IMG/VR virus record: IMGVR_UViG_3300025309_000006 | Span: 62,001-126,000 of that record | Length of the DNA stretch: 64,000 bases | Direction: 5' to 3' (one strand) | Part shown: positions 5,599 to 55,110 of the stretch, one piece after another | Layout: every line of letters starts with the position of its first letter | How positions within the stretch are numbered: position 1 is the stretch's first letter | The notes under the pieces: generated by a model | Database searches by the model: none | Told to the model about the DNA's origin: nothing | Seen by the model: only the letters and a program-made list of their open reading frames with translations | Program-made: the position numbers and the translations under genes

Positions 5599-5707
5599 AA
5601 ATATTTGGTTGTTTAAATAATTTGCAAGTTATTTAAATGTAAAACGAAGAGGCGTACTGCTATACGACTCTTTATCCTATTTTCAAAGCTTTTTGGCAGA
5701 AAAGAGG
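5599..5707 (+). promoter_or_regulatory. Structured leader RNA, copy A
   Basis: Hairpin 5612-5637 with TTGCAA loop; GTAAAAC linker; hairpin 5646-5673 whose loop CTGCTA complements TGGCAG (5694-5699) next to the RBS. Confidence 0.55.
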
Positions 5708-5711
5708 TAAA

Positions 5712-7145
5712 ATGATGAAAAAATGTTTTTTAGATGAGTTGCCCAGATGGGGAAAAGCAGAAAAAGTAACAGATGGTAAACAAGGGACTATTAATTGGAA
5801 AGAATCAATAGGATATATTGTTAAATTCATTTATGATAATATTGAAGGGGAAATTGAAATTGTTGATTATAACAAAAGTTATCTAGATATAAAATACAAA
5901 GATGAGGATATATATAATATATATTCAGGCACTTTTACAAAATGTCAATTAGGTATTTTACTAAATAAAAAAACTAAAAAGTTTAGAGTAGAAATAGGTA
6001 CTATATTTAAAGACAACAAAAGAGATATAATTATTACAAATAAAGAATATAAAGATAATCCTTATAATAAAGGAAATAAATTGAAATGGTATAATTATAA
6101 GTGTAATAAGTGTGGATGGGATGAAGGATGGATAGAAGAAAGTGTCTTAATAAGAGGACAAGGTTGTTCATGTTGTACTGGTCAAATAGTAGTAGAAGGT
6201 ATAAATGACATTCCAACAGTTGCTCCTTGGATGGTAAAATACTTTCAAGGAGGGTACGATGAAGCAAAATTGTATACAAAAGGTTCTAATCACAAAATAT
6301 ATCCAATTTGTCCAGATTGTAATAAAGTAAAAAATAAATCTATGGAAGTATGTTCAATATATGCCAATCGCTCTATTGGGTGTAATTGCGGAGATGGAAT
6401 TAGTTATCCTAATAAAATTGTATTTCATCTATTGAGTCAATTAAATTCTGAATTTGTTTCTGAAGCTTCTTTTAATTGGACTACAAAAAGATATGATTTT
6501 TATTTATCCTTATTTAAAAGTATTGTAGAGGTACATGGTTTACAACATTATAAAGAAAAACAAAGATCAAAAACAAGTAGAAATCTCAAAGAAGAACAAA
6601 AAAATGATAAATGCAAAGAAGAATTAGCAAAAGAAAATGGAATTAATAATTACATAATAATTGATGCTAGATATTCTGAGTTAGAATTTATAAAAAGTAG
6701 TATATTAAATAGTAAACTAAATGAATTGTATGATTTGTCAAAAATTCAATGGATTAAATGTGAAGAATTCGCATTGTCGAATTTAACTAAAAAAGCATGT
6801 GAATTAAAATGTAATAATTTTAGCACAACTAAAATTGCTGAGATAATGAAATTAGGGGTAAGTACAGTTATAGCATATTTAAAAAGAGGAACGAAAATAG
6901 GATGGTGTAATTATAATCCCAAAGAAGAAATGATTAAGGCAGTTACTAATAATGGCAAAATGAATGGTAAACCAGTAGAAATATTTAAAAATAATATTTC
7001 TTTAGGAATATTTGAGAATTGTCATGAGTTAGACCGACAAAGCGAAAATGTTTTTGGAATTAAATTAAATTATAGTTCTATATCATCTGTCTGTCGTGGT
7101 GAAACAAATCATTATAAAGGATTCATTTTTAAGTATGTTATTTAA
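5712..7145 (+). CDS. Free-standing homing-type endonuclease (Zn ribbons, PD-(D/E)XK-like core, HTH, NUMOD1-like)
   Basis: CxxC pairs; YDFY...IVEVHGLQHY core; C-terminal SSISSVCRG...YKGFIFKY; paralogous to 55122..56834. Confidence 0.75.
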   Translation: MMKKCFLDELPRWGKAEKVTDGKQGTINWKESIGYIVKFIYDNIEGEIEIVDYNKSYLDIKYKDEDIYNIYSGTFTKCQLGILLNKKTKKFRVEIGTIFKDNKRDIIITNKEYKDNPYNKGNKLKWYNYKCNKCGWDEGWIEESVLIRGQGCSCCTGQIVVEGINDIPTVAPWMVKYFQGGYDEAKLYTKGSNHKIYPICPDCNKVKNKSMEVCSIYANRSIGCNCGDGISYPNKIVFHLLSQLNSEFVSEASFNWTTKRYDFYLSLFKSIVEVHGLQHYKEKQRSKTSRNLKEEQKNDKCKEELAKENGINNYIIIDARYSELEFIKSSILNSKLNELYDLSKIQWIKCEEFALSNLTKKACELKCNNFSTTKIAEIMKLGVSTVIAYLKRGTKIGWCNYNPKEEMIKAVTNNGKMNGKPVEIFKNNISLGIFENCHELDRQSENVFGIKLNYSSISSVCRGETNHYKGFIFKYVI

Positions 7146-7211
7146 CGATTTATTTCGTGTGTAACTATGTGATTAAATATTAATATAAAATAAATAAAAA
7201 GTAGGTGGTGT

Positions 7212-7406
7212 TTGGTGGCAAGTAAGAAAAACAAAAATAACCCAGATAATAAAGCAAATGGGAATGTAAAACAAAATAAATTAATATCGAGCGAATATTG
7301 TGAGAAGAACTGTTTAAATGTTGGTGAGTGTCAGAAATATAAAGATTATTTGGCTAGGATGGTAGTGCTACATAAAGTAGGAAAGGGATTGCTTTGCGAT
7401 AAGTAA
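7212..7406 (+). CDS. Hypothetical protein
   Basis: RBS AGGTGGTG, TTG/GTG start. Confidence 0.55.
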   Translation: MVASKKNKNNPDNKANGNVKQNKLISSEYCEKNCLNVGECQKYKDYLARMVVLHKVGKGLLCDK

Positions 7407-7497
7407 ATATTTGCAGTAGATAAAGAGCATTTAGAAATAAGTGCTCTTATTTGTGTTGCAAAGTTGTGATGCAAATATATTGAAAGGAGGAACTAAA

Positions 7498-7725
7498 ATG
7501 AATGAGTTTATAAATGAAGAAAAAGTAGAAACAAAAACAATTCCAACAAAAGAAAAAGTAACATATTTGTACAATATCCTGCAAATCAACTATTATCTCA
7601 GTCATGGAATTTGCCCAAAACAAATTGGAATTAATTCAACTACAAAACGAGTATGGGCAGAATTTTCTTGGGAAGGCACTACGGAAATATTCGGAAAATG
7701 GTGTCAAAGAAAAGTCATTAAATAA
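7498..7725 (+). CDS. Small DUF5659-like protein
   Basis: RBS AAAGGAGG; YNILQINYYLSHG...RVWAEF pattern resembles the DUF5659-type proteins elsewhere in the window. Confidence 0.5.
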   Translation: MNEFINEEKVETKTIPTKEKVTYLYNILQINYYLSHGICPKQIGINSTTKRVWAEFSWEGTTEIFGKWCQRKVIK

Positions 7726-7764
7726 TACATTAAACAAATAAATTGAAGAAAGAAGGAATTTATA

Positions 7765-9381: not shown

Positions 9382-9410
9382 CCTTAAAAACAAGGAGGTC
9401 GAAAGACTAA

Positions 9411-10947: not shown

Positions 10948-11096
10948 AACAAATAAAATAATAATTAATAAATCATATCCATGAAGTAATTTTGGGACAC
11001 CAAAATTGCGTAATGTTCCGTAGGACAAATATCAAATCAATAAAAACAACAAATAACCCAACGAAGCAAGGTCTTGTATTGCTATGTCGAAATACG

Positions 11097-11133
11097 CTTC
11101 TAGCCATTTCGCTAACGCTCAATGACTAGGATT
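11097..11133 (+). repeat. 37-bp hairpin repeat, copy 1 (sso-like)
   Basis: CTTCTAGCCATTTCGCTAACGCTCAATGACTAGGATT; one mismatch to 42457-42493. Confidence 0.85.
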
Positions 11134-11316
11134 TATTATTTGCTTAAATGATTTGTTAAATTTAATCCACTCATCACAAATTCTTAATAATAAATAAATA
11201 AAATTATTGTCGAAACAAATCACAATAAAAATCTAGCAATTTCCTCCTTTTTACTATATACTTAACACAACAAACAAATCCAAATAATCAAATTATAGTA
11301 AATGGAGGAAAGAAAT

Positions 11317-12933
11317 ATGAAAAGAAAACTATTCCCTAAAAAACTATTAACCACAATTTCCACAATCACATTATCCATTGCTCTATTATTCACATCCTCA
11401 TCTGTATTACCAACATTAGGTGCAACAAACACAAATCCAACAATTAATAGGCTCAGTGGTAATGACCGTTACGACACATCATCTCAAATTGCCAAGCAAG
11501 GGTGGTCTAATGGCTCAGATTCTTGTATTCTTGTCTATGGAGGTAATTATCCTGATGCACTCTCAGCAACACCTTTAGCAAAAAAACTTAATGCTCCAAT
11601 ATTGCTTACGGAAAACACATCGCTTACTCCAATAACAAAGCAGACAATAGTTGATCTGAATGTTAAAAACGTCACAATTATCGGTGGTACAGGTGTATTA
11701 TCATCTGCAATTGATACAGAATTGCAATCAATGAATATTAATGTAACTAGAATTTTTGGTCAAACTCAGTATGATACAGCTATAGAAATTGCTAAACAAT
11801 TCCCTTCTCCAAATGAACTAATAGTCTGCACTGGAGAAGAATTCTCTGACTCACTTTCAATTTCTCCTGTAGCATCAATTAAGCAAATACCGATTATATT
11901 GGTTCCTTCTGATAACATGCCAAGTTCAGTAAAAAATTATATTAATACAAATTCAGCAAATATTACGAAATCCTATATAATTGGAAATACAGACATAATT
12001 AATGATAATGTTGCCAATCAATTTCCAAATGTTGAAAAAATATCAGGTGCAACAAAATATGATAGAAATATAGCCATAAATCAAAAATTCAATAATCAAT
12101 TTAATTCAAATAATATTTGTCTTGCCACTGGTGAGCAATTTCCAGACGCTCTAAGTGGAAGTTCTTATGCATCCAAAATATCTTCTCCAATTATTTTAGT
12201 AAATAATGCTACTCCTAATGGTACGAAAAATTATTATCAGCAAAGATTAACAAATACTGATAATGTAATCGTTTTTGGTGGTACAGCAGTTGTTCCAGAT
12301 AGTGTAATACAAGGATTAGGCAATATAAGTAGTACAGATACGAATGTAAATGTACCTATTACTCCTATTGCACCAATTGCACCAATTGATATTGACAATA
12401 CTAATATTGTTAATAATTCAAATAATACTACTAATTCAAATAACAATAATACTACTACCATAATTAATAATGGATCTTCAAGTATAGATACTTCAACTGG
12501 TTGCATTAAAGGTTCTGTCACTTGGCAGTATAATAAATTTATTGGAACCAAAGCAGATGTCGGAGCAAAAATAGCTTTAATACCAAAAAATCTCAATAAA
12601 AATAGTGATAATCCAGTTTTTTCTTTAACATTATCACAAATACCTCAAGGTCAGAATGGAATTTATACTGCGAAAGCTAATGGATATGGAGAATATGAAA
12701 TTGCTGATGTTCCAGTTGGTAGTTATTATTTGTTAATTTCTTCTGTAAACACGAATAATAATATGACAATATCTTCAATTGATCAACAAATATTAAGCAA
12801 TTTATTGTCTTCAATGGATTGGAAATTTATTCAACCAACTTTAAAAATTCATAAGTATAATCTAATTAAAGTGCAGATAGAGGGTGGAAAAACCTTGACA
12901 GAAAGTTATGACTTTGGAAACACTTATATTTAG
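11317..12933 (+). CDS. Secreted cell-wall-binding repeat 2 (CWB2) surface protein
   Basis: Signal peptide; RLSGNDRYDTS; three CWB2 repeats (DALS/DSLS...PILL/PIIL); Asn-rich linker; C-terminal beta domain. Confidence 0.85.
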   Translation: MKRKLFPKKLLTTISTITLSIALLFTSSSVLPTLGATNTNPTINRLSGNDRYDTSSQIAKQGWSNGSDSCILVYGGNYPDALSATPLAKKLNAPILLTENTSLTPITKQTIVDLNVKNVTIIGGTGVLSSAIDTELQSMNINVTRIFGQTQYDTAIEIAKQFPSPNELIVCTGEEFSDSLSISPVASIKQIPIILVPSDNMPSSVKNYINTNSANITKSYIIGNTDIINDNVANQFPNVEKISGATKYDRNIAINQKFNNQFNSNNICLATGEQFPDALSGSSYASKISSPIILVNNATPNGTKNYYQQRLTNTDNVIVFGGTAVVPDSVIQGLGNISSTDTNVNVPITPIAPIAPIDIDNTNIVNNSNNTTNSNNNNTTTIINNGSSSIDTSTGCIKGSVTWQYNKFIGTKADVGAKIALIPKNLNKNSDNPVFSLTLSQIPQGQNGIYTAKANGYGEYEIADVPVGSYYLLISSVNTNNNMTISSIDQQILSNLLSSMDWKFIQPTLKIHKYNLIKVQIEGGKTLTESYDFGNTYI

Positions 12934-13233: not shown

Positions 13234-13977
13234 TTATTTATTCATTGATAATTCTATAATTAGCTCATTTTTATACCTAATTTTTTCATTATTGAGTCTA
13301 ATTATTTCCGTAGCATGATCAATTGCATTTGAAAGAACATTATTTAACTTTAACATATTTTCTTTAATATTTAGTCCATTTTTACACTCTGATAAAATCT
13401 TCTTAAATTCTTGTTTAATTTCTAAACTCTCATTTGGTATATATAATTCTGCACAATAATCTAAATCTAATACACTATTATTAGGTTTATTTAATTTACT
13501 AAGATCACAAGTTAAGAGATTTTTTAAAGTTTTAACATCTTGTGAATCTTCTTCAGTGTCTTCTGTTTTTACTTTTATATAATTTAAATAAGGTAAATTT
13601 TCTAAAATATCATTCAAACTTAAATCAAATAATTCTCCACTTTTTCTTCTCTTATTATCAAAGAATTCATGTAATATTTTTTCTGTTTCGTAGTAATTTA
13701 CATGTGGTTGTGATAATAACATTAATTTGCTGTTACTCTCACATTCATCTACAAGACTATAATTTTTAAATGTACTATTTATGTTTTGTATTCTAATTAT
13801 TGGATTTTTCGTACATCCAATTTTTAAGTAATCACCATATGGAACAATATATACATATCCAAAATAGGGAATGTCAGAATATATAGATTTAACATAATTA
13901 AATATACTGTTAATATGATTTCCGATATACCAAGGTTCTCCATTTATTTCGATGACTTTAACTTCTTCGTTTAACAT
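13234..13977 (-). CDS. T5orf172/MUG113-like GIY-YIG protein
   Basis: GYVYIV...KIGCTKNPIIR...EKILHEFF...GELF. Confidence 0.75.
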   Translation of the reverse strand: MLNEEVKVIEINGEPWYIGNHINSIFNYVKSIYSDIPYFGYVYIVPYGDYLKIGCTKNPIIRIQNINSTFKNYSLVDECESNSKLMLLSQPHVNYYETEKILHEFFDNKRRKSGELFDLSLNDILENLPYLNYIKVKTEDTEEDSQDVKTLKNLLTCDLSKLNKPNNSVLDLDYCAELYIPNESLEIKQEFKKILSECKNGLNIKENMLKLNNVLSNAIDHATEIIRLNNEKIRYKNELIIELSMNK

Positions 13978-15298: not shown

Positions 15299-15402
15299 TA
15301 CAGAGGATAAAAGTTGAGAGTAATTAACTCAATGGGCAAACTCCACCCTCCTCTGTATTTATATATTTTTATGGTTTAGGTGGAGTAAATAAAAATTGGA
15401 GG
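15299..15402 (+). promoter_or_regulatory. Structured leader RNA, copy B
   Basis: P1 TACAGAGGA/TCCTCTGTA; P2 TTGAG-AGTAATTAA-CTCAA; P3 loop ACTCCA complements GTGGAGT (15380-86) and TGGAG at the RBS. Confidence 0.65.
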
Positions 15403-15413
15403 ATGAAAGAGAT

Positions 15414-16562
15414 ATGAGTAAGAAATATACATATGAAGAAGTTAAGAAATTTGTTAATGATTTAGGATATGAATTAATTGGTGAATACAGAAATAGTCAT
15501 GAAAAAATAATCTTAAAAGATGTATTTGGTTATTATTATTCAATTAATTTAAATAATCTAAAAAACAATAAAATTCCTAGTAAATTCGGAATTGATAATC
15601 CGTATATAATTATAAATTTAAAATTGCTGTTAATTTTAAATTTTAATGAATTTTATTTAGTTGAAGATAATGATTATTCTGGAGTTAAAAGCAAAATAAT
15701 TTTAAAAGACAAATTTGGTTACTTTTATAGTGTTTCAGTGGATAGTTTACAACAAAATAAATATCCATTAAGATTCCACCCATCAAATCCTTTTAGTATT
15801 CAGAATATCAAATTATGGCTTAATTTAAATAATAAATCATTTAAATTAGTAAGTGCTCAGTATAAAGGAAATGATAAGCTTTTGATTTTTATAGATAAAA
15901 ATAGGTATTACTATAATTGTCGTTTTGCAGACATGCAAAGAGGCAAGGTTCCAGACAGATTTAATAAAAGCAATGTATTTACGATAGACAATATAAAACT
16001 TTGGTGTAAATTAACAAATAAAGATTTTGAATTATTAAGCAATAAATTTTTAGGGAGTGGCGATTATTTAAAATGGAAATGTTTAAAATGCAATGATGAA
16101 TTTGATAAAATTTGGGAAAATATTAAAGAAAATAGAGGTTGTCCAGCATGCAACAAATCTAAAGGGGAAAAGGAATGTAAAAGGGTTTTTCTTTCTAAGG
16201 GTTTTATTGAAATTACTCAAGAAGATTATAATAAACTATTAGATATTGATAAAAATCTTAATATATATATTATCTGTCAGAAAACTTTTGAAGGTTTATT
16301 AGGGATTAGAAATGGTTTATTATCATATGATTTCTTTATACCTAAATATAACTTGCTTATTGAATACCAAGGAGAATTTCATGATGGTAATGGAAATTAT
16401 TATATGAAGAAAAATCTTAAGAAGCAAAAAGAACATGACAGACGTAAGAGAGAATATAGTGAAAATAATAACATTAACTTATCAGAAATTTGGTATTGGG
16501 ATTATGATAATATAGAAAATATTTTAGATAAGATTTTAGACAAAGAAGAGTTTGCGGGTTAG
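15414..16562 (+). CDS. Free-standing endonuclease (repeated DNA-binding modules, Zn ribbon, DUF559/PD-(D/E)XK-like domain)
   Basis: Three ~75-aa repeats (L.D..GYYY...NP...NIKL); CLKC...CPAC; SKGE...YDF...IEYQGEFH...D..K...IWYWD. Confidence 0.75.
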   Translation: MSKKYTYEEVKKFVNDLGYELIGEYRNSHEKIILKDVFGYYYSINLNNLKNNKIPSKFGIDNPYIIINLKLLLILNFNEFYLVEDNDYSGVKSKIILKDKFGYFYSVSVDSLQQNKYPLRFHPSNPFSIQNIKLWLNLNNKSFKLVSAQYKGNDKLLIFIDKNRYYYNCRFADMQRGKVPDRFNKSNVFTIDNIKLWCKLTNKDFELLSNKFLGSGDYLKWKCLKCNDEFDKIWENIKENRGCPACNKSKGEKECKRVFLSKGFIEITQEDYNKLLDIDKNLNIYIICQKTFEGLLGIRNGLLSYDFFIPKYNLLIEYQGEFHDGNGNYYMKKNLKKQKEHDRRKREYSENNNINLSEIWYWDYDNIENILDKILDKEEFAG

Positions 16563-36485: not shown

Positions 36486-36681
36486 AATAATTATTCTTTA
36501 TAAAGATAGACTTCTTAGATTTGGTTTTGAATTAATAGAAGATTTAATTCAAATTATTACTGTATTTAGTTGCAGACTTCAAGGGAAACGAGCAAACAGA
36601 ACTAGAAAAATGATTGATGATTTAATTAAGGAAGGAGATGAGGAAATTGATAAAGGGAATCAAAGTGATGCTTGTACCTAA
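36486..36681 (+). pseudogene. tnpA: Truncated IS607 serine recombinase TnpA
   Basis: ILYKDRLLRFGFELI|EDLIQIITVFSCRLQGKR; lacks the N-terminal HTH and catalytic Ser and has an internal deletion. Confidence 0.85.
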
Positions 36682-37828
36682 CAATAAGCAGAATACATTA
36701 ATGTTTCAAAATGCTGGAGTTAAAAGATGGGCTTTCAATTGGGCATTAGGTAGAGAAAAGGAAAATTATGCTAATGGTGGTAAGTTTATTTCTGATAATG
36801 ATCTTAGGAAAGAATTAACTCAATTAAAGCAAACTAAAGAGTTTAGTTGGTTAAACAATGTTTCTAATAATGTACCTAAACAGGCAGTTAAAGATGCTTG
36901 CATTGCATATCAGAGATTCTTTAAAGGTCAAGCAAAATTCCCTAAGTTCAAAACTCGAAAGAAATCTCCTCCTAAATTTTATCAAGACAATATTAAAATT
37001 CAATTCACATCTACTCATGTTAAATTTGAAGGATTTGCTAAAAGTAAAAAGGCAAATAAGCAAAAGTTGAACTGGGTGAGATTAGCTGAACACAATAGAA
37101 TTCCTTTTGGTAAAGATGTTAAGTATATTAATCCAAGAGTGTCGTTTGATGGTTTAAATTGGTTTATTAGCGTAGGGATTGAATATCCTGATAATGTTGA
37201 AACTCCATTAAATGAAGGAATTGGCATTGATTTAGGAATTAAAGATTTAGCGATATGTTCTGATGAAAAAACTTATGGGAATATCAATAAAAATAAGAAA
37301 ATGAAACGATTAGAAAAGCAAAAGAAGCGATTACAAAGACAAGTTTCTAAGAAATATGAAGATAACCGTGATGGTTTGAAATATATTAAAACCAAGAATA
37401 TTATTAAGTTGGAACTTAAGATAAAATCAGTTCAGCATAAACTTAATGGCACTAGAGATAATTATCTCCATCAAACAACTTCTGAGATAGTGGGACGAGA
37501 ACCAAGTCATATTACTATTGAAGATTTGAACATTCAAGGAATGATGAAGAACAGAAACCTATCCAAAGCAATTCAACAACAATCTTTGTATGAATTTGGT
37601 AGACAGTTGAAGTATAAAGGATTGTGGAATCATATTGAGATTAGAATTGCTGACAGATGGTATCCAAGCTCAAAGACATGTCATGATTGTGGTAAAGTTA
37701 ACAAGTTGTTAAATTTAAATGACAGAGAATGGGTTTGTACTGGTTGTGGAAGTATTTTAGACAGGGATTATAATGCTTCATTAAATTTAAGAGATACTAA
37801 CAATTACAAGATATTTAAAGTAGTATAG
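36638..37828 (+). CDS. tnpB: RNA-guided endonuclease TnpB
   Basis: RuvC D (GIDLG), E (IEDL), D (DRDYNAS); Zn finger CHDC...CTGC. Confidence 0.92.
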   Translation: MRKLIKGIKVMLVPNNKQNTLMFQNAGVKRWAFNWALGREKENYANGGKFISDNDLRKELTQLKQTKEFSWLNNVSNNVPKQAVKDACIAYQRFFKGQAKFPKFKTRKKSPPKFYQDNIKIQFTSTHVKFEGFAKSKKANKQKLNWVRLAEHNRIPFGKDVKYINPRVSFDGLNWFISVGIEYPDNVETPLNEGIGIDLGIKDLAICSDEKTYGNINKNKKMKRLEKQKKRLQRQVSKKYEDNRDGLKYIKTKNIIKLELKIKSVQHKLNGTRDNYLHQTTSEIVGREPSHITIEDLNIQGMMKNRNLSKAIQQQSLYEFGRQLKYKGLWNHIEIRIADRWYPSSKTCHDCGKVNKLLNLNDREWVCTGCGSILDRDYNASLNLRDTNNYKIFKVV

Positions 37829-37996
37829 GTAAAAACATATACTCGGACGTTGCCGAGGAATTTAAGCTCTTGGAGTGTTAAGCAACTTGAGTAGCATTAG
37901 AAATAATGTGAAAAAGAACACGATGAATGGAAAATGAAACATAGAGTTATAACTTATTTGTTTAATTTATAACTTCTTATAAGTTTTCAGTAACGG
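37829..37996 (+). ncRNA. Putative TnpB omega-RNA scaffold (guide = flank from 37997)
   Basis: Non-coding right end after tnpB with hairpins (CTCGG-ACGTTG-CCGAG); location expected from TnpB biology. Confidence 0.65.
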
Positions 37997-40459: not shown

Positions 40460-41071
40460 CTATCCATATTTTTCTTTTTGCTTTAACAGAGTTTTCTTTT
40501 TACGTTTACGATTTTGTTGCTCCTTTTTAATTTTACTATCCTTAACATTTTGTAATCGTTTCCATTTTGGTATTAAAATATATTCTTTATATTCTTCATA
40601 AGACATATTATCTTTTTCTATATTGCAATCGCCACAACAACAAACTAAATTATCTTCGTTGAATTCTCCACCTTTGCTCTTTGGAATTAAATGGTCAACA
40701 GTATCTCCTTTAACTCCACAATAATGACATTTATAATTGTCACGTTCATTAACATTGTATCTAACAATCCAACTCTCATCTTCATGATTTGGCATATAAA
40801 TTGTATCTGATTTATAAACCTGTGCTTTATCTTCATTTACTAAAGAAATGGCTTCATCAAGAGAGATTAACTTTTTGGAAATTAAATATTTACTTCTAAG
40901 AATTATGTTTTTCAAGGAGATATCTAAATTTTTTAATCCAATGTTTATACTTTTATATTCTATCATTTTATTCACAGCTTTTTCTATTTCACATTGAATA
41001 CATTGTTTTGTTTTAGAGCCTCTAAATTGAGAATCATCTTTTTCGATTTCGCATTTAGTGCATCTTCTCAT
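40460..41071 (-). CDS. HNH endonuclease
   Basis: RDNYKCHYCG...TVDHLIPKSKGG...NLVCCCGDCNIEK. Confidence 0.9.
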   Translation of the reverse strand: MRRCTKCEIEKDDSQFRGSKTKQCIQCEIEKAVNKMIEYKSINIGLKNLDISLKNIILRSKYLISKKLISLDEAISLVNEDKAQVYKSDTIYMPNHEDESWIVRYNVNERDNYKCHYCGVKGDTVDHLIPKSKGGEFNEDNLVCCCGDCNIEKDNMSYEEYKEYILIPKWKRLQNVKDSKIKKEQQNRKRKKKTLLKQKEKYG

Positions 41072-41406: not shown

Positions 41407-42072
41407 ATGGAAAAGCAAATTTTAAATCACGTTAAACAATTAATACTTTTGCCAGATGGGATAAACACAACTGTTGAAATGGTTTCAGAATATTACGAAG
41501 TTAAAGACAATGCAATGCGTCATTTAATATTAAGACACAATGAAGAATTAAAAAATAGTGGATTATATGTCATAGAAGGAATTCAACTAAAATCATTTAA
41601 AATAATAAACAGTATAAAATCAAGAGCAAGATCATTAACTATTGTTCCAGTAAAAGCAATATTAAAATTTAGTACATTATTAGCCAGTTCTAATATCGCA
41701 CAAGAAGTCAGAGAAGAATTGGTAAAACAAAATCCTAAACTATATGAAGAGTTGACAAATGGGCATAGATTGCAATTTAAGAAATTTGAGCAAAAATATG
41801 AAGAATATTTAAATTTTTCTTTTGGAGTAGAAAATATTCAAAAGCAAGTAAATTGTGGTGGTTATCTGATAGATTTTGTGTTGTTTAATACTATAGCTAT
41901 AGAAATAGATGAGAATGGACATTCTTCATATTCTAATGAAAAAGAAATAATAAGAGAAAAACATATAAGAAGTGAAGGCTATAATATTGTTAGATTTAAC
42001 CCACATAAGCAAAAACCATATGAATTAATGGGGATGATATTAAAGATGACAGATGTCCTGCCAGGACTTTAG
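41407..42072 (+). CDS. Antirepressor-like DNA-binding domain fused to a DUF559-type endonuclease domain
   Basis: TVEMVSEYYEV...RHNEEL...S.IAQEVR; YLIDF...IAIEIDENGH...RE...IVRFNP. Confidence 0.7.
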   Translation: MEKQILNHVKQLILLPDGINTTVEMVSEYYEVKDNAMRHLILRHNEELKNSGLYVIEGIQLKSFKIINSIKSRARSLTIVPVKAILKFSTLLASSNIAQEVREELVKQNPKLYEELTNGHRLQFKKFEQKYEEYLNFSFGVENIQKQVNCGGYLIDFVLFNTIAIEIDENGHSSYSNEKEIIREKHIRSEGYNIVRFNPHKQKPYELMGMILKMTDVLPGL

Positions 42073-42256: not shown

Positions 42257-42374
42257 TAGTCAATGGCTGATAGGAGTAATTAACCTGTCAAAAAGAAGGT
42301 TCCAACCTACCTTCGCCATTGACTATTTTATATACAAAAAGGTTGGAGTACAATACAAAATTTGAAAGGTTGGG
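42257..42374 (+). promoter_or_regulatory. Structured leader RNA, copy C (orphan)
   Basis: P1 TAGTCAATGGC/GCCATTGACTA; P2 TGATAGG-AGTAATTAA-CCTGTCA; P3 GAAGGT-TCCAACCT-ACCTTC; loop complements AGGTTGGA (42340-47). Confidence 0.7.
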
Positions 42375-42456
42375 ATACGAAATGAAAATTAAATTAATTA
42401 TTGACAAAGTATAAGAGAACCTAACGAAAGCAATGTATCGGTCAAAGCGTTGACCT

Positions 42457-42493
42457 CTTCTAGCCATTTCGCTATCGCTCAATGACTAGGATT
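42457..42493 (+). repeat. 37-bp hairpin repeat, copy 2 (sso-like)
   Basis: CTTCTAGCCATTTCGCTATCGCTCAATGACTAGGATT. Confidence 0.85.
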
Positions 42494-42538
42494 ATAATTT
42501 AATCTATTTTTAATAATATGAAGGTGGTGTTAATAACT

Positions 42539-43783: not shown

Positions 43784-44548
43784 ATGAGCATGGGAATTTA
43801 TAAAATAGAAAATATGATTAATGGAAAAATATACGTAGGCAGTTCTAAAAATATAGAGAACAGATGGAGTCAACATAGAAGTTTATTAAAATCAGGAAAA
43901 CATCACTCACAGCATTTGCAATATGCATGGGATAAATATAATGAAAGCAATTTCAAATTTGATATTATTGAAGACATGATTACACAAGAGGATTTATTTG
44001 TAAGAGAACAATATTGGATGGATAAATTACAATGTTATAATCCTAAAATTGGATATAATATTTCAATATTAGCTAATGCTTGTTTAATGAATGATAATTA
44101 TGATTTTAAAGAAATTATACAAGAAGAAAATGAATTAGCAAATAAACATAAAATAATATACATGATTATAGATAAGAAAAATGAAGAATTGATTTATAGA
44201 GGTATGCAGGATAGATATCTCGTTGAACATATATTTAGTGACTTTATATATTATCTATACAGATATTTTGAAAGTATTGATTTTAAATCTTTTGATAATA
44301 TAATTCTATATACAGATAAAGGGAATCTAACCATGAAAGATTTTCAAGGAATAAATACAGAAATATGCAAAGACAATATTTATAAATTAAACTTTAAAAA
44401 GGTTATTATTGAAAATGGCCATGGAGGGCAAAGAGAAGTTCTTTATAAGAATAGTTTTGAGTTTTATGAAATAAAAGAAAGTAAAGACGGTTATATGACA
44501 ATTAGGGTTTATGATGGTTTTGATGTAATAAACTATATACTTGAATAA
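43784..44548 (+). CDS. GIY-YIG endonuclease
   Basis: GIYKIEN..NGKIYVGSS.NI..RW..H...REQYW...GYN. Confidence 0.9.
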   Translation: MSMGIYKIENMINGKIYVGSSKNIENRWSQHRSLLKSGKHHSQHLQYAWDKYNESNFKFDIIEDMITQEDLFVREQYWMDKLQCYNPKIGYNISILANACLMNDNYDFKEIIQEENELANKHKIIYMIIDKKNEELIYRGMQDRYLVEHIFSDFIYYLYRYFESIDFKSFDNIILYTDKGNLTMKDFQGINTEICKDNIYKLNFKKVIIENGHGGQREVLYKNSFEFYEIKESKDGYMTIRVYDGFDVINYILE

Positions 44549-44676: not shown

Positions 44677-45447
44677 ATGATGATGATTATCAATAATATC
44701 AATGAGCAAAATGATAATATACAGGATAACTTAGTTTATAAATTCTATAATATAAATAATGAATTGCTGTATGTTGGCATTACCAATAATATGAAAATTA
44801 GATTAAAGCAACACAAGCAGGACAAAGAATGGTTTGATGAAATTAAAAGAATATACATCACTGAAAAAATGACTAGAAATGAAGCTCATATTTATGAAAT
44901 ATTCTATATTGCAAATGAAAATCCTTTATATAATATAGACTATATCAATGGTGGCAAAGTTGGTTTTGTGATAAGCGAATTATTATTCAAAGATTACAAG
45001 AAAGAGAGAAGAAAGAGGATAAACGTTGATATTGTTTTGAGAATGTATAATGAAGGTAAATCAATAGAGGAAATAGCCACAGAATTAAAATACTCTACTG
45101 AATACATTGCTAAAAACTTGAGATCAAAATTAATAGAATTAAGGGAAGTTAAACCAAATCGTAGAAATGGGAAAAATGAAAGATTTGAAATGTTTGTTAA
45201 TTGTCTTACATACTTGTCTAATAAAAAATATTTTACAATAGAAGATATTGTATATAAGTTCATGAATGATTATGAATGTACAGAGGAAACTGCAAAAACA
45301 TATTATAAAGACGAGTTTGCAGTTTTACTTATTGAAGAGGTTAATAAAATAGGTTTGAAAAGAATTAGAGCGAATAAAGTTATTAAAGAGCAATTTGGAA
45401 TGGATGGTGAAGGATACCCCTTTATAATTTGCAAAGATGGTGAATAA
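44677..45447 (+). CDS. GIY-YIG nuclease with HTH
   Basis: VYKFY....LLYVGIT.N...RLKQH...E..YI....P.YN. Confidence 0.8.
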   Translation: MMMIINNINEQNDNIQDNLVYKFYNINNELLYVGITNNMKIRLKQHKQDKEWFDEIKRIYITEKMTRNEAHIYEIFYIANENPLYNIDYINGGKVGFVISELLFKDYKKERRKRINVDIVLRMYNEGKSIEEIATELKYSTEYIAKNLRSKLIELREVKPNRRNGKNERFEMFVNCLTYLSNKKYFTIEDIVYKFMNDYECTEETAKTYYKDEFAVLLIEEVNKIGLKRIRANKVIKEQFGMDGEGYPFIICKDGE

Positions 45448-49302: not shown

Positions 49303-49405
49303 TTTTTTGTTAGTGAATTGTTAGAGCAATAAATAAATTAAACAGGTGAGAACTTGCAAGTTTTAATTGGTAGCTACCCTCCCTGATCAGGAGGAGAGAA
49401 AGAAA

Positions 49406-50533
49406 TTGGAAAACAATATATATTATGTTTATGAATATATACGACTAGACACAAATGAGCCATTTTATGTAGGAAAAGGCTGTAAGAATAGATGGTGTAA
49501 CACCAAACAGAGAAATAAATATTTTAAAAACATAATTAGTAAAATTCCAGTAGCAGTACATATTTTACATGAAAATTTATCCGAAATTGAAGCATTTGAA
49601 TATGAATGTTGGTATATCAATGAATACAAATATAATATGAGTTATGATTTAACCAATATTATCGATGGTGGAGAAGGAGGGGATACAAGATCAGGAAACT
49701 CAGAAGAAAACATCAAACTAAATAAAAAGCAAAGTATTTCCAGCAGAGGAATGAACGCTATATTGAATGAGGAAAAAGTCAAAAAAATAAAGATAGAAAT
49801 ATTAAATAATATAGATATGCACTATATAGCTAAAAAATACAGTGTAAACTATACCACTATTTGTAAAATTAAAACATGTAAAAATTGGGAATGGGTATGT
49901 AGTGAGTTAAATAATAAATTATTAACTATGAATAAAGATCAAGATGATAAAATAATTGATTATTATTACAGCAACCCACATTTATCAATGGTTCAGATTG
50001 GTTTAGATTTAAATACAGCATATGGAAGAGTTCGGAAATTAATAAGTGATAAAATAAAATTAGAATCAAGGAATATTATAGGCGTAAACCTAAAGAACCA
50101 ACTTTATAAGAGTAGAATTACAATAAAAGGAAAGGAGATTCATCTTGGTCATTACAGAGAATTAAAATATGCAGAAAAGGTTAGATTAATTGCCGAAATA
50201 GTATATTTAAAAGATAAATCTCCGCAGAAACACAAGTTAAAAAAATACGACTTAGACTTTAAAGATATTGATATAAATACTTTAAATGAATTTATCAATA
50301 AATATTCAACTAAATCAACCGTTAAAATTATTTGTTTGACTACAGGAGTTATTTTTAATAGTTTCAAAGAAGCCGAAAATTTCTATAGAATCAATAATTT
50401 TAGCAAGAATGGTTATTTGTGTTTAACAGGGAAGAGAAAAACTTTTGGCAAGCATCCAATTACAGGTGAACCTCTAAAATGGCAATACTACGATGAATAC
50501 ATAAAATCAAACCAACTCCCAACCGCAATATAA
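49406..50533 (+). CDS. GIY-YIG-type homing endonuclease with AP2-like and NUMOD-like domains
   Basis: YYVYEY.RLDTNEPFYVGKG...LTNI.DGGEG; EIHLGHY; KIICLTTG..F; TTG start after AGGAGGAG. Confidence 0.8.
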   Translation: MENNIYYVYEYIRLDTNEPFYVGKGCKNRWCNTKQRNKYFKNIISKIPVAVHILHENLSEIEAFEYECWYINEYKYNMSYDLTNIIDGGEGGDTRSGNSEENIKLNKKQSISSRGMNAILNEEKVKKIKIEILNNIDMHYIAKKYSVNYTTICKIKTCKNWEWVCSELNNKLLTMNKDQDDKIIDYYYSNPHLSMVQIGLDLNTAYGRVRKLISDKIKLESRNIIGVNLKNQLYKSRITIKGKEIHLGHYRELKYAEKVRLIAEIVYLKDKSPQKHKLKKYDLDFKDIDINTLNEFINKYSTKSTVKIICLTTGVIFNSFKEAENFYRINNFSKNGYLCLTGKRKTFGKHPITGEPLKWQYYDEYIKSNQLPTAI

Positions 50534-52537: not shown

Positions 52538-52614
52538 ATTATGATTACCTCCCTATGTTTGATGATTATATTTGGTTAATTTAGCATGTCCATTTTGTTG
52601 GATTAATAATTACT

Positions 52615-53424
52615 CTATTTAAATCTAATCTCTTTAACATCAATTAAACAATCTGGATCTATAATAATTTCACTCTCTCCTCTTTTATCAATATAAGCAA
52701 GAATATCTTCAATTTTAATCATTGCTTCATATAACTCTCCCCTATATTTATTGAACCTTGTAGCAAAGAATTTAGCTTTTTCTTTATCAATTGTCCAAGA
52801 AAAAGCTTTTTGATAAGGTGTAGATTTAGTATTTTGTCCTCGATATATTTTGACCAATCCATTAACATCTGGTTTAATATTTTCATTTAAATTTTCTTTA
52901 GGTTTGTATTTGAAAATATTAAGAAAGAAGTCTTTGTTAAGGTTTGAGAAACCATACTCAGAACGGCTGTAGATGTCCTCAAAGCAATCGTATTTCTGTT
53001 CATCAGGTATATCATCAAATGATTGAATATAGAAGTCTAGAGCAATTTTCTTTTCAATAAGGAAAAATAATTTGTTGTATTGCTTTTTAGAGATATAATT
53101 ATTCATACTTTCTTCAATTTTTTCAATTCTCTGTTTAGTATGCCAACTAGTCAATGATTCTATATTGAATACACCTATATCTACCATGACAGGGCCAGAG
53201 ATGTAGGTAAAAGGTGTTAGAAAATTATCAGTAAAGTAGAAGTTAGATATTGGTTTATCAAGGTATTGTACGGCTTCTAGTATGGTTTGATAAGGTGGTA
53301 TTTCATATTCAGTTTCTTCCATTATTTTGATTCTAAATTGATTATCTGAGAAGAGTGATGCAGGGATTAATGAATTTTTGTTTAGGTTTCCATGAGATAG
53401 TTTGAATATGTCGCTTATGTTCAT
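52615..53424 (-). CDS. ADP-ribosyltransferase-fold-like protein
   Basis: IYRG...FSWT....A..FA...ESEII, an R-S-E-like pattern. Confidence 0.5.
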   Translation of the reverse strand: MNISDIFKLSHGNLNKNSLIPASLFSDNQFRIKIMEETEYEIPPYQTILEAVQYLDKPISNFYFTDNFLTPFTYISGPVMVDIGVFNIESLTSWHTKQRIEKIEESMNNYISKKQYNKLFFLIEKKIALDFYIQSFDDIPDEQKYDCFEDIYSRSEYGFSNLNKDFFLNIFKYKPKENLNENIKPDVNGLVKIYRGQNTKSTPYQKAFSWTIDKEKAKFFATRFNKYRGELYEAMIKIEDILAYIDKRGESEIIIDPDCLIDVKEIRFK

Positions 53425-53457
53425 ATTGTTAACTCCTTTGTGTTTATAATGTTTATT

Positions 53458-54507
53458 CTATTTTAATAAGTCGAAATCCATTATTGTTTTCTTGAACCGT
53501 AGATAAAGTTTTCCACACATCTCATCTGCTTCGATTCCAAATATAGATGAATCAACGCCTAACACCTTAATAATTTCTTTAAATTGTGGCAGATTAATTT
53601 TCTTTTTACCTTTTTCAATATTGTATAATTCATCTAATTTTAGATTGGAATTTTTAGTAAAGTTAGATGTAGATATTTTCTTTAACTTTCTTACTCTTTT
53701 AATATTAAATCCCATATAATTGCCATTTTTTATAGCTTGATCAATTTCTAATTGGATATAAAAGTTTTTTGTGCTGATTTGTTTTTCTTTTTCGGTTAAT
53801 GTATCTGGTCGTTTATTATGGTGTTGTTTTAGTTGTTTTGGTTTTTGCGTATTTTTATCTATAGTTAATATATCTGTCCGGCTTTTATTTACAGGAGATT
53901 TGATTGCGAAGTCCATTATACTTGATTTGAATCGTACATACAATTTTCCATAAAGTTCATTTTCTTCAAGATTAAATATAGAATAATCAATATTAAGTGA
54001 ATCATATATTTTTACAAATTCTGATAAACAAATTCTAGTTTTACCAGATTCAATTTTAGTTAGTTCATACGATTTTATACCAATGTTTTCAGATAATTTA
54101 GCAACACTTATTTTCTGTATTTTTCGTATTCTTTTTATGTTAGTTCCCATGTAGTTACCTTTTTCTATTGCTTTTTTAGTTTCTATTTGAAGATAAAAAT
54201 CTTTTGTATTTTTATTAATGATATTTAATTTTTTAGCATTTTTATCATTAAGTCTTTTTACTTTAATTTTACAACGATAACATAAAGAAGATAAGTTTTT
54301 GTATTTAAAAATTTTACCACATTTTTCGCATTTATCATATATTGTAACTTCTTCTTTAATATTTTGAGCACGCAATAAACTTTTATCACAGTCGATACAT
54401 TTTAATGTTGTAGAATTTTCTGGTAATGGTTTAGCACATTTGATACATAAATTGTATGCGATTCTAATTTTTTGAATATCATTATAATTTATAAGATTTA
54501 TGTCCAT
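53458..54507 (-). CDS. Zn-ribbon + tandem XRE HTH regulator
   Basis: CxxC motifs; two internally duplicated HTH modules (GNYMG.NIKR.RK...IE.GK). Confidence 0.75.
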   Translation of the reverse strand: MDINLINYNDIQKIRIAYNLCIKCAKPLPENSTTLKCIDCDKSLLRAQNIKEEVTIYDKCEKCGKIFKYKNLSSLCYRCKIKVKRLNDKNAKKLNIINKNTKDFYLQIETKKAIEKGNYMGTNIKRIRKIQKISVAKLSENIGIKSYELTKIESGKTRICLSEFVKIYDSLNIDYSIFNLEENELYGKLYVRFKSSIMDFAIKSPVNKSRTDILTIDKNTQKPKQLKQHHNKRPDTLTEKEKQISTKNFYIQLEIDQAIKNGNYMGFNIKRVRKLKKISTSNFTKNSNLKLDELYNIEKGKKKINLPQFKEIIKVLGVDSSIFGIEADEMCGKLYLRFKKTIMDFDLLK

Positions 54508-54604
54508 GTGACAACCTCCATTTCGACAATGATGGTTATATTATAGCATATTTAGTTGTTTTGTTCAAATTTGAGGTAATATGAAATTAATAAAATAATA
54601 AAAA

Positions 54605-54725
54605 CAAACAAAAAAGAAACGAAGATTGGCTGTACACACCAAATTCTTCATTTTAGCAGAGACCTTGAGATAATAAAAGCCATTGAGTTAGTTTGAGCTA
54701 GAAGAATGCTGAAAATAACTCAATG
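54605..54725 (-). ncRNA. Candidate structured small RNA
   Basis: Minus-strand TTTACA-N18-TACAAT (TGn) promoter, long hairpin CATTGAGTTA/TAACTCAATG, terminator-like hairpin with U-tract, no ORF. Confidence 0.4.
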
Positions 54726-55003
54726 TGCTTATTGTAGCATGGATTGGGTTGAGTTGTAAAGGTTAGGGTTTTTGGGATGGATATATTATCCCATAAAAGT
54801 ATGTTTTTATTTTGTTTGAAATAATGGTTTTGAAAGTGGCTTATAGCAAGGGTTGTAGAGGTGGTAATTGTTGGGATTTGGGTTATTTGGAGGGATTTTT
54901 GAGGTAAATTAGTTAGAATTTAATATTTTTTATTTTTAAAGAGCTGTTGAGGTTCTTTTTGTTTTGTTTTGTTTGGGTAGAAATTGAAATTGAATTTAAT
55001 ATT

Positions 55004-55110
55004 GGTTGGATAGGAGTCAGGCCAGACTTTTATCTGTAAAACGAGGCACTTGAGTTTTCCTTAGAACTTGAGTGTCTTATTCCAATTGTGGCTCTTATTA
55101 AGGAAAGGGG
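55004..55110 (+). promoter_or_regulatory. Structured leader RNA, copy E
   Basis: P2 GATAGGAGTC-AGGCCA-GACTTTTATC; GTAAAAC linker; long P3 whose loop TTCCTTA complements TAAGGAA at the RBS. Confidence 0.7.

What the first reader, a model, noticed from the sequence alone, without database searches (positions are those of the whole stretch)
5599..55110. Repeated leader RNA (three-way junction, palindromic loop, anti-RBS pseudoknot) in front of unrelated free-standing endonuclease genes
Seen: a shared architecture at 5599-5707, 15299-15402, 42257-42374, 55004-55110 and partially at 49343-49395. A closing stem P1 (clearest in copies B and C) encloses P2 and P3. P2 loops are self-complementary (TTGCAA at 5.6k and 49.4k, AGTAATTAA at 15.3k and 42.3k, AGGCCA at 55.0k). 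Copies A and E share the linker GTAAAAC. The P3 loop differs in every copy yet always complements a segment at or just before the RBS (CTGCTA/TGGCAG; ACTCCA/TGGAGT; TCCAACCT/AGGTTGGA; TTCCTTA/TAAGGAA), which amounts to covariation. Four of five copies precede homing-type endonucleases of different families. Established: phage homing endonuclease genes are often repressed by simple RBS-sequestering hairpins, and palindromic loops can mediate kissing-loop dimerisation. Inference: a portable cis-regulatory RNA module travelling with selfish nucleases, perhaps a dimerisation- or concentration-sensing translational switch. I do not recognise it as a named family.
Basis: partly seen in the sequence, partly recalled or inferred. 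Interest (0 to 1): 0.85.

Follow-up and report, generated by a model that had tools for sequence, protein, structure and literature searches.

The report
Structured leader RNA before phage nucleases
Four spots in this Clostridia-type phage carry copies of a previously uncatalogued folded RNA leader (three helices plus a loop that pairs with the ribosome-binding region) that sits in front of selfish DNA-cutting genes in dozens of related phages and probably throttles their translation.

Summary
Copies B (15300-15356) and C (42258-42324) belong to an RNA family of more than 40 distinct leaders in related phage and metagenome contigs. The family has a three-way junction (P1-P2-P3) followed by a U-rich tract. 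Covariation is strong: 94.7% of cells pair versus 68.6% in shuffles, 21 of 22 pairs show double changes, and G-U outnumbers A-C 33 to 3. Copies A and E belong to a second subtype with the same architecture. In both subtypes the P3 loop covaries with a downstream site at or next to the Shine-Dalgarno sequence (SD). In the B/C subtype it matches two sites, an upstream SD-like decoy and the real SD (permutation p<1e-4 each). P2 loops are enriched in 6-nt palindromes (10 of 22 versus 2 expected). No Rfam family matches. The fifth copy (49343-49395) is only an ordinary anti-SD hairpin. The endonucleases after A, B and E are related to each other, not unrelated. Elsewhere, though, a near-identical leader precedes a GIY-YIG endonuclease, so the module is portable. 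The most likely function is cis control of endonuclease translation by a pseudoknot at the ribosome-binding site. Dimerisation and attenuation are plausible extra layers. None of these functions has been tested experimentally.

The parts
5605..5711 (+). Copy A, whole leader (A/E subtype), from the weak P1 to the base before the start codon
   Evidence: Fold; 19.1 bits with R2; relatives L216, L309, L314, L319 and L320 share the architecture.
5612..5637 (+). A: P2 hairpin (UUUAAAUAA / UUAUUUAAA) with loop UUUGCAAG at 5621-5628, which contains the palindrome UUGCAA
5638..5645 (+). A: J2/3 linker UGUAAAAC, shared with copy E
   Evidence: relatives have UAUAAAAC / UGUAAUU / GUAAAAA.
5646..5673 (+). 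A: P3 hairpin with loop CUGCUA at 5657-5662
5694..5699 (+). A: pseudoknot target UGGCAG, 2 nt 5' of the SD AAGAGG (5702-5707)
   Evidence: Duplex -8.0 kcal/mol; subtype permutation test 2 of 5040.
5712..7145 (+). Homing endonuclease gene after A (477 aa; phrog_4538 / 9084 / 559)
15300..15356 (+). Copy B three-way junction. P1 15300-15307 / 15349-15356. J1/2 UAAAA. P2 15313-15318 / 15328-15333 with loop AGUAAUUAA at 15319-15327. P3 15334-15336 / 15346-15348 with loop CAAACUCCA at 15337-15345.
   Evidence: R1 24.2 bits, R2 39.1 bits; variants L038, L093 and L242.
15357..15379 (+). B: U-rich tract and spacer after P1'
15380..15386 (+). B: site 1 (decoy) GUGGAGU, complementary to the P3 loop plus the first C of P3'
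   Evidence: Duplex -14.2 kcal/mol. Compensatory change in L093: ACUCCAU / AUGGAGU versus ACUCCAC / GUGGAGU.
15397..15403 (+). B: site 2, UGGAGGA, the SD for ATG 15414
   Evidence: Duplex -9.3 kcal/mol; family test.
15414..16562 (+). Homing endonuclease gene after B (382 aa; DUF4379 zinc ribbon; phrog_559 / 9084)
42258..42324 (+). Copy C three-way junction. P1 42258-42267 / 42315-42324. P2 42268-42274 / 42284-42290 with loop AGUAAUUAA at 42275-42283. J2/3 AAAA. P3 42295-42300 / 42309-42314 with loop UCCAACCU at 42301-42308.
   Evidence: z -3.24; R1 23.5 bits, R2 54.8 bits.
42340..42348 (+). C: site 1, AGGUUGGAG
   Evidence: Duplex -13.4 kcal/mol.
42367..42375 (+). C: site 2, AGGUUGGGA, 6 nt before ATG 42382
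   Evidence: Duplex -13.2 kcal/mol.
42382..42414 (+). C: only a 10-codon ORF follows, making this an orphan leader with no endonuclease remnant
55004..55087 (+). Copy E three-way junction (A/E subtype). P1 55004-55010 / 55081-55087. P2 55011-55018 / 55025-55032 with loop AGGCCA at 55019-55024. J2/3 UCUGUAAAAC at 55033-55042. P3 55043-55056 / 55064-55078 with loop UUCCUUA at 55057-55063.
   Evidence: variant L191; orthologous leaders L309, L314, L319.
55099..55111 (+). E: pseudoknot target UAAGGAA (55099-55105), abutting the SD AGGGGA (55106-55111)
   Evidence: Duplex -7.8 kcal/mol. L314 has the compensated pair UCUUUA / UAAAGA.
55122..56834 (+). Homing endonuclease gene after E (570 aa; paralogue of the A gene, 40% identity)
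49343..49405 (+). It is not a family member. It has small hairpins and a simple CCUCC...GGAGG anti-SD hairpin before a GIY-YIG-like gene (TTG 49406).
   Evidence: z -0.58; no model hit.

Best explanation
These are copies of an uncatalogued family of cis-acting 5' leader RNAs that belong to free-standing homing-endonuclease cassettes of Clostridia-type phages.

Shown by comparative analysis:
- The leader folds on the sense strand into a three-way junction (closing stem P1, hairpins P2 and P3) followed by a U-rich tract.
- The P3 loop is kept complementary to a downstream segment at the ribosome-binding site.
- In the A/E subtype this segment lies directly 5' of the SD.
- In the B/C subtype the loop is an anti-SD-like sequence that matches two alternative sites: an SD-like decoy 6-40 nt after the junction, and the true SD.

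Inferred:
- Pairing of the loop with the SD region places a pseudoknot inside the 30S landing site and limits translation of a potentially toxic nuclease from abundant read-through (late operon) transcripts.
- The decoy competes for the same loop. The balance, or the co-transcriptional order (decoy first), then sets how much SD is free, making it a tunable two-state switch.
- The U-rich tract after P1 probably adds partial transcription termination.
- The self-complementary P2 loop probably lets leaders pair with each other (kissing), which could make the switch depend on RNA concentration.
For: Structure:
- An alignment of 23 members shows 94.7% paired cells versus 68.6% in shuffles (0 of 500 shuffles as high). 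21 of 22 pairs have changes on both sides. Slid-register controls give 40-55%.
- G-U pairs outnumber A-C 33 to 3, so the structure acts as RNA on the coding strand.
- RNAalifold on a plain MAFFT alignment recovers P2 with compensatory pairs. Single-sequence MFE folds recover the junction.

Specificity: about 33 hits in endonuclease loci, all co-oriented and upstream of ORFs. Only 1 weak hit in 889 kb of unrelated viral DNA.

Pseudoknot:
- A leader's own loop binds its own decoy region at -7.8 kcal/mol versus -4.6 for other members' loops, and its own SD region at -9.0 versus -6.1. Permutation p<1e-4 for each, n=28.
- In the A/E subtype only 2 of 5040 permutations do as well.
- Single compensatory changes occur between close relatives: B versus L093, E versus L314.

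Association with endonucleases:
- All 29 ORFs after model-defined leaders fall in one endonuclease cluster.
- In the RNA-only pattern scan plus copies in the flanks of its loci, 10 of 11 distinct leaders precede endonucleases, including a GIY-YIG enzyme.

Other features: U-rich tract in 28 of 31 members versus 9.8% background, p=2e-25. Palindromic P2 loops in 10 of 22 versus 2.05 expected; P3 loops 0 of 27.

Precedent: RBS-sequestering structures regulate I-TevI, I-TevII, I-TevIII, segB and mobE (PMC2988022, section 12).
Against: - No experiment exists. The sign of regulation cannot be read from sequence.
- In the A/E subtype the loop pairs next to the SD, not with it. In plasmid repZ/repA systems that arrangement activates translation.
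- One member (L230) keeps decoy pairing but has lost complementarity to the SD. This suggests the loop-decoy pseudoknot may be the primary conserved contact.
- With one loop and two sites, full sequestration of the SD is impossible in a monomer.
- No promoter that would give leaderless late transcripts was found. The T4 timing logic therefore cannot simply be transferred.
- The covariance alignment was fitted to the model, which inflates pair counts somewhat.
- Members are phylogenetically related, so the permutation p-values are optimistic.
Confidence: 0.55

Rival explanations
1. Attenuator plus trans-acting leader fragment. The junction closed by P1 and followed by the U-tract terminates most transcripts, releasing a roughly 75-nt RNA. 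This RNA docks on full-length mRNAs through the self-complementary P2 loops. Its P3 loop then occupies the second site, so decoy and SD are both covered (two loops, two sites). The result would be concentration-dependent shut-off.
For: - U-rich tract after P1' in 28 of 31 members.
- In many members P1 is an A-tract/U-tract pair flanking a G+C-containing P3, like a Firmicute terminator. The model cross-hits genuine terminators.
- Palindromic P2 loops are enriched.
- Two sites match one loop.
- Precedent recalled from memory: terminated riboswitches acting in trans in Listeria (SreA).
Against: - The simple terminator scan calls nothing on the + strand at copies A, B, C or E.
- Branched terminators are unusual.
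- The commonest palindrome (UAAUUA) is all A-U, which is weak for a kissing complex.
- The A/E subtype has only one site.
- There is no transcript-end data.
Confidence: 0.15
2. The pseudoknot is a translational activator or standby element. Loop pairing next to the SD, or to the decoy, keeps the true SD single-stranded or recruits 30S subunits. This would resemble the repZ/repA pseudoknot of IncI-alpha/IncB plasmids or ribosome standby sites.
For: - In A, E and their relatives the target lies just 5' of the SD, not on it.
- The decoy is transcribed first and is at least as well matched as the SD in B and C.
- L230 retains only decoy pairing.
Against: - In most B/C-type members the loop is equally or better matched to the SD core itself (mean -9.0 versus -7.8 kcal/mol). 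That is hard to explain if SD pairing were unwanted.
- There is no conserved leader peptide or antisense partner as in the plasmid systems. Start codons after site 1 are not conserved in frame.
Confidence: 0.12
3. The junction is an aptamer for a protein (phage regulator, ribosomal protein or the endonuclease itself) or for a small molecule. Binding would stabilise or disrupt the pseudoknot.
For: Conserved junction nucleotides in the main subtype (GAUAG before P2, UGAKAAG before P3) and a conserved P2 loop AGUAAUUAA in many members.
Against: - Junction sequences differ between subtypes (B: UAAAA and no J2/3; C: AAAA; A/E: UGUAAAAC). P2 loops change freely as long as they stay palindromic.
- Near-identical leaders serve unrelated proteins: a zinc-ribbon endonuclease, a GIY-YIG endonuclease and a membrane protein. 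This argues against autoregulation by the product.
- No riboswitch family matches.
Confidence: 0.08
4. The element mainly stabilises the mRNA. It would act as a compact 5' structure plus an SD-like ribosome-binding decoy (like STAB-SD of cryIIIA or the SP82 5' stabiliser) protecting against 5'-to-3' decay.
For: Site 1 is a good SD mimic without a usable start codon. The structure lies at the 5' edge of the cassette, often just after an upstream terminator.
Against: A stabiliser decoy needs complementarity to 16S rRNA, not to a neighbouring hairpin loop. Yet decoy and loop covary beyond the GGAG core. Transcript 5' ends are unknown.
Confidence: 0.07

Closest known systems
RBS-sequestering hairpins of T-even phage homing endonuclease genes (I-TevI, I-TevII, I-TevIII, segB, mobE)
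   Same: A cis RNA structure immediately upstream of a phage homing endonuclease ORF that involves the SD region. The genes lie in long polycistronic late transcripts, and mobE has layered control that includes terminators (PMC2988022, section 12).
   Different: Those are single hairpins whose 5' arm is left out of transcripts from an internal late promoter. Here the structure is a conserved three-way junction whose hairpin loop pairs at a distance (pseudoknot). It often has two alternative targets and a palindromic second loop, and no internal promoter was detectable.
SD-sequestering pseudoknot riboswitches (e.g. preQ1-II, SAM-II/V classes)
   Same: The SD or its flank is drawn into a pseudoknot with an upstream loop.
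   Different: There is no Rfam match. Junction nucleotides are not conserved across subtypes, and no ligand is implied.
HIV-1 DIS-type kissing loops
   Same: An apical loop of about 9 nt with a 6-nt palindrome flanked by purines (AG-UAAUUA-A, CG-UCAUGA-A). PMC7357161 section 2.1 describes GUGCAC flanked by conserved purines. Here the palindrome identity changes while self-complementarity is kept.
   Different: The context is a bacterial-phage mRNA leader, many palindromes are A/U-rich or only 4 nt long, and dimerisation is untested.
repZ/repA activator pseudoknot of IncI-alpha/IncB plasmids (from memory)
   Same: The loop of an upstream hairpin pairs with a sequence adjacent to the RBS of the downstream gene.
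   Different: The plasmid systems need leader-peptide translation and an antisense RNA. Neither is evident here.
STAB-SD / 5' stabilisers of Bacillus mRNAs (from memory)
   Same: An SD-like sequence in a 5' UTR that is not used for initiation (site 1).
   Different: Here the decoy covaries with a hairpin loop, which those elements do not require.
RAGATH-18 / TnpB reRNA (present elsewhere in the window)
   Same: A structured RNA next to a mobile nuclease gene in the same phage.
   Different: It has a different position (3' of TnpB), a different fold and function (guide RNA, PMC11061315), and no sequence or model similarity to the leaders.

Membership tests
Any Rfam 15 family (riboswitches, ribozymes including hammerhead/twister/pistol/hatchet, RAGATH motifs, leaders) | Covariance-model match at or near the gathering score | tested here: not met
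   Window scanned at gathering threshold and at E<=10: nothing overlaps any copy. Sixteen representative loci scanned at E<=1: no hit on any leader.
T4-type RBS-sequestering regulators of homing endonuclease genes | Structure lies directly upstream of a homing endonuclease ORF | tested here: met
   A, B and E, and about 40 relatives. C is an orphan.
T4-type RBS-sequestering regulators of homing endonuclease genes | SD is base-paired within the structure | tested here: inconclusive
   B/C subtype: the loop is complementary to the SD but also to a decoy. A/E subtype: pairing abuts the SD. These are in-silico results only.
T4-type RBS-sequestering regulators of homing endonuclease genes | Internal late promoter gives transcripts lacking the inhibitory arm | tested here: inconclusive
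   No sigma-70-like site above shuffle expectation, and no conserved motif in the spacer. The promoter type of this phage is unknown.
Palindromic kissing-loop dimerisation element | Apical loop containing a self-complementary hexamer, maintained through sequence change | tested here: met
   10 of 22 distinct P2 loops have a palindrome of at least 6 nt (expected 2.05, p<5e-5). 17 of 22 have at least 4 nt (expected 9.0). Five different hexamers occur in the tested set, and a sixth (UUCGAA) is seen in L309 and L314. P3 loops: 0 of 27.
Palindromic kissing-loop dimerisation element | RNA forms homodimers dependent on the loop | not testable with these tools
   Needs native gels or SEC with loop and compensatory mutants.
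Intrinsic terminator / attenuator | Stable stem immediately followed by a U-tract | tested here: inconclusive
   The U-tract is present in 28 of 31 members. However, the stem is the closing helix of a branched structure, and the consensus scan calls no + strand terminator at A, B, C or E.
IncI-alpha/IncB-type activator pseudoknot | Coupled leader peptide and antisense RNA control | tested here: not met
   No conserved uORF. Start codons after site 1 are absent or not in a conserved frame. No antisense partner was looked for beyond strand-specific G-U counts.
The new leader family itself (B/C-type model R2) | Score well above background with the covariance model | tested here: met
   C 54.8 bits and B 39.1 bits; both are in R2's seed alignment, so those scores are partly by construction. 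With R1, built without any window sequence, they score 23.5 and 24.2 bits. A is marginal (19.1 bits, E 0.21), E is not found and D is not found. A and E qualify only through the separate subtype.

The most novel reading that the evidence does not exclude
The leaders work as natural RNA homodimers. Self-complementary P2 loops would bring together two leaders, or a terminated leader fragment and a full-length mRNA. The two P3 loops would then cover both the decoy and the true SD. This would give a concentration- or copy-number-sensing translational off-switch that selfish nuclease cassettes carry with them and exchange between nuclease families.
Probability: 0.15. Interest if true: 0.85.

Novelty: new variant of a known kind. 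Interest (0 to 1): 0.62.

Why it matters
Homing endonucleases must be expressed enough to spread but not enough to harm their phage. Outside T-even phages almost nothing is known about how that balance is achieved. This family offers several things:
- a compact, covariation-supported RNA device (about 75 nt plus targets) that recurs several times per genome;
- two clear subtypes, each with built-in compensatory 'experiments';
- evidence that the device is retained while the nuclease ORF behind it is swapped.

If the two-site competition or the palindromic-loop dimerisation is functional, it would be one of very few natural bacterial or phage RNAs regulated by homodimerisation. It would also be a ready-made tunable translation module for Firmicutes. 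At minimum it is a candidate new Rfam family and an annotation marker for free-standing endonuclease cassettes in Clostridia phages.

Tried and rejected
- **Near-identity DNA search against cultured phages:** no match.
- **Exact-pattern scans of IMG/VR with strings shared by B/C and by A/E:** nearly all of the 67 and 115 matches were chance hits in coding DNA. Only L038, L093 and L191 were real variants.
- **Home-made helix descriptor:** about 190 hits per strand, so useless in AT-rich DNA.
- **Hammerhead or other ribozyme reading of CUGAUAAG:** rejected. There is no GAAA strand and no Rfam hit.
- **MAFFT alignments of whole leaders:** structurally incoherent. This was solved by seeding a model from six length-matched members.
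- **Relation of the endonuclease family to the DUF559 protein upstream of C:** none found by hhalign.
- **Endonuclease remnant after C:** none.
- **Promoter and terminator scans:** nothing above shuffle expectation on the + strand.
- **Leader upstream of homologues of the A-type endonuclease (L007-L017):** absent.
- **Leader in Clostridioides phage ES-S-0173-01:** absent.
- **Search for an endonuclease-free allele at B's site:** found only a contig with a TnpB-like insertion there instead. Whether the leader moves with the cassette at that site therefore stays unresolved.

Full report
**What the window is.** The window is part of a roughly 230-kb phage contig (IMGVR_UViG_3300025309_000006). 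It has no close cultured relative. It encodes a CWB2 cell-wall-binding protein, and relatives of its genes sit in Clostridium/Clostridia MAGs, so the host is probably a clostridial Firmicute. The window is crowded with mobile nuclease genes:
- three zinc-ribbon (DUF4379) endonucleases of one family, which are the genes after copies A, B and E;
- two Pfam-confirmed GIY-YIG genes, plus a third (49406-50533) recognised only by its sequence motif;
- an HNH gene, a DUF559 gene and a T5orf172 gene;
- an IS605/IS607-type TnpB.

**Checking the observation.**
- MFE folding gives a three-way junction for B, C and E, and two hairpins for A. The 'partial' copy at 49.3 kb folds no better than shuffles.
- The window alone cannot prove significance. 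A permissive descriptor of 'two hairpins in a closing stem with a downstream complement' matches about 190 times per strand.
- I therefore looked for relatives. Upstream regions of homologues of the B-type endonuclease in IMG/VR, JGI metagenomes and GTDB genomes showed the same arrangement with quite different helix sequences in more than half of the cases.

**Structure and covariation.**
- A covariance model seeded from six length-matched members found B and C in the window and many others.
- A curated 23-member alignment has 94.7% of cells paired against 68.6% in column shuffles. 21 of 22 pairs change on both sides, and slid registers give 40-55%.
- G-U pairs outnumber A-C 33 to 3, so the structure is selected as RNA on the coding strand and not as a DNA palindrome.
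- The second model scores C at 54.8 bits and B at 39.1 bits. B and C are in its seed alignment, so these scores are partly by construction.
- The second model recovers about 33 members in endonuclease loci, all co-oriented with the ORF. It gives one weak hit in 889 kb of unrelated viral contigs.
- Its low-scoring cross-hits are ordinary terminators.
- Conserved features of the main subtype are GAUAG before P2, UGAKAAG before P3, no J3/1 linker, and purine-rich 5' strands.

**A and E are a second subtype.** The B/C-type model barely sees A (19 bits) and misses E. Homologues of the E endonuclease carry leaders with the A/E layout: P1 AUGG/CCAU-like, a long P2, J2/3 UGUAAWW, and a long P3 with a 6-7-nt loop. 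MFE folds recover this layout independently.

**The pseudoknot.**
- In the A/E subtype the P3 loop always complements a 6-7-nt segment directly 5' of the SD. The pairs are:
  - CUGCUA/UGGCAG (A)
  - UUCCUUA/UAAGGAA (E)
  - CUGUCA/UGACAG
  - UUUGCCG/UGGCAAA
  - UCUUUA/UAAAGA
  - CCACUAU/AUAGUGG
  - CCAGUA/UGCUGG
- Only 2 of 5040 permutations of loops among these leaders do as well.
- In the B/C subtype the loop is anti-SD-like and matches two sites: an SD-like decoy shortly after the junction, and the real SD. Both covary with the loop beyond the GGAG core, for example:
  - ACUCCUAAC with GUUAGGAGU and GUUAGGAGA
  - UCCGAG with UUCGGAAG and UUCGGAGG
  - in C, UUCCAACCU with AGGUUGGAG and AGGUUGGGA
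- A leader's own loop beats other members' loops for both regions (p<1e-4 each).
- Close relatives show single compensated changes (B versus L093).
- Energies in the window are:

| Copy | Decoy / target (kcal/mol) | SD (kcal/mol) |
|---|---|---|
| B | -14.2 | -9.3 |
| C | -13.4 | -13.2 |
| A | -8.0 | n/a |
| E | -7.8 | n/a |

  For A and E the single target lies next to the SD.
- One member (L230) has an inverted loop with a re-matched decoy but an unmatched SD.

**Other conserved features.**
- P2 loops are enriched in self-complementary cores. The hexamers UAAUUA, UCAUGA, UAGCUA, UUGCAA and UUAUAA occur in the 22 loops tested, UUCGAA is seen additionally in L309 and L314, and the tetramers include GGCC, GAUC, GUAC and GCGC.
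- 10 of 22 distinct loops have a hexamer palindrome against 2.05 expected. P3 loops have none.
- The usual format, two bases plus a hexamer plus A, resembles the HIV-1 DIS loop (PMC7357161, section 2.1).
- A caveat is that template-switch 'perfecting' of quasi-palindromes could maintain such centres without selection.
- A U-rich tract follows P1' in 28 of 31 members, against a 9.8% background.

**Gene association and portability.**
- All 29 ORFs after model-defined leaders form one endonuclease cluster. This sample was drawn by endonuclease homology and is therefore biased.
- That cluster's distant cultured relatives are annotated as group I intron or homing endonucleases.
- A second sample was drawn by an RNA-only pattern, with further copies found in the flanks of the resulting loci. 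It gives 11 distinct leaders. Nine precede this endonuclease family, one precedes a Pfam-confirmed GIY-YIG endonuclease, and one precedes a 185-aa membrane protein.
- The GIY-YIG leader is almost identical to that of a zinc-ribbon endonuclease, down to the first three codons. The ORF was therefore exchanged behind a retained leader.
- The leader is patchy. It is absent from homologues of the A endonuclease. It is present in only part of the B/E homologues.

**Mechanism.**
- The best-supported reading is cis control of translation initiation by a pseudoknot at the ribosome-binding site. This is a more elaborate version of the RBS-sequestering hairpins known for T-even endonuclease genes (PMC2988022).
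- In that reading the decoy acts as a competing partner that sets the free-SD fraction, and the U-tract may attenuate transcription.
- What is shown: the structure, the strand, the covariation of the loop with its targets, and the association with endonucleases.
- What is inferred: repression, the decoy logic, termination and dimerisation.
- Autoregulation by the encoded protein is unlikely, because unrelated products share the same leader.
- A small-molecule pocket is unlikely, because junction sequences differ between subtypes.
- The rivals (attenuated leader acting in trans through kissing loops, activator pseudoknot, stabiliser) are not excluded.

**Novelty.** No Rfam 15 family matches any copy or any of 16 representative relatives. 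Literature searches found only the T4 hairpin paradigm. I rate it a new variant of a known kind: a new, well-supported RNA family whose general job is familiar but whose architecture is not described for phage endonuclease genes. That architecture combines a junction, a loop-to-SD pseudoknot, a dual target and a palindromic loop.

Noticed in passing
window 36638-37934 (+): A TnpB gene (OrfB_IS605, Cas12f1-like TNB, HTH_OrfB; 36638-37828) is followed by a RAGATH-18 RNA at 37867-37934 (48.4 bits, above the gathering score). This is the reRNA/guide arrangement described for IS607 TnpB (PMC11061315), here inside a phage genome.
   Followed up: partly
window about 11058-11141 and 42413-42496 (+): A conserved non-coding element occurs twice. 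It includes a 44-nt stretch with a single mismatch, CUUCUAGCCAUUUCGCUA(A/U)CGCUCAAUGACUAGGAUU. One copy lies between a helicase-like gene and the CWB2 gene; the other lies just after orphan leader C. There is no Rfam match and the function is unknown.
   Followed up: partly
L341 700-1679 (also L339): A GIY-YIG endonuclease ORF sits behind a leader nearly identical to that of zinc-ribbon endonucleases (L024, L226, L342). It even shares the first codons ATGGGTAAA. The recombination junction therefore lies within the first few codons.
   Followed up: yes
L335 1414-2060 (also L334): A bona fide two-site leader (loop UCCGACU; AGUCGGG twice) lies in front of a 185-aa multi-pass membrane protein with no Pfam match. 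This is the only non-nuclease cargo seen.
   Followed up: partly
L230 819-960: The P3 loop is the reverse complement of the loop in its close relatives L024 and L226. The decoy site has changed to match it (UUGUGU), but the SD has not.
   Followed up: partly
window 49376-49396 (+): A simple CCUCC...GGAGG anti-SD hairpin lies before a GIY-YIG-like gene that starts at TTG 49406. It is ordinary and is not part of the family.
   Followed up: yes
L345 3594-5046: In a related phage, the site that holds leader B plus its endonuclease is instead occupied by a hairpin and a TnpB-like ORF (apparently split). The spot is a hotspot for different mobile nucleases.
   Followed up: partly
window 13234-13977 (-), 40460-41071 (-), 41407-42072, 43784-44548, 44677-45447: Further mobile-nuclease-type genes (T5orf172, HNH, DUF559, two GIY-YIG), none preceded by the leader. 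The density of such genes in 64 kb is unusually high.
   Followed up: partly
window 56889-58346 (-) and 11302-12933 (+): A DndB-like (DNA sulfur-modification-associated) protein and a protein with three CWB2 cell-wall-binding repeats. The latter points to a clostridial host.
   Followed up: no
5' edge of leaders in many loci (e.g. L025 2868, L234 1372, window 42254): UUUA or UUA(G/A) is conserved immediately 5' of P1 in most members. It could mark a transcription start or a processing site.
   Followed up: no
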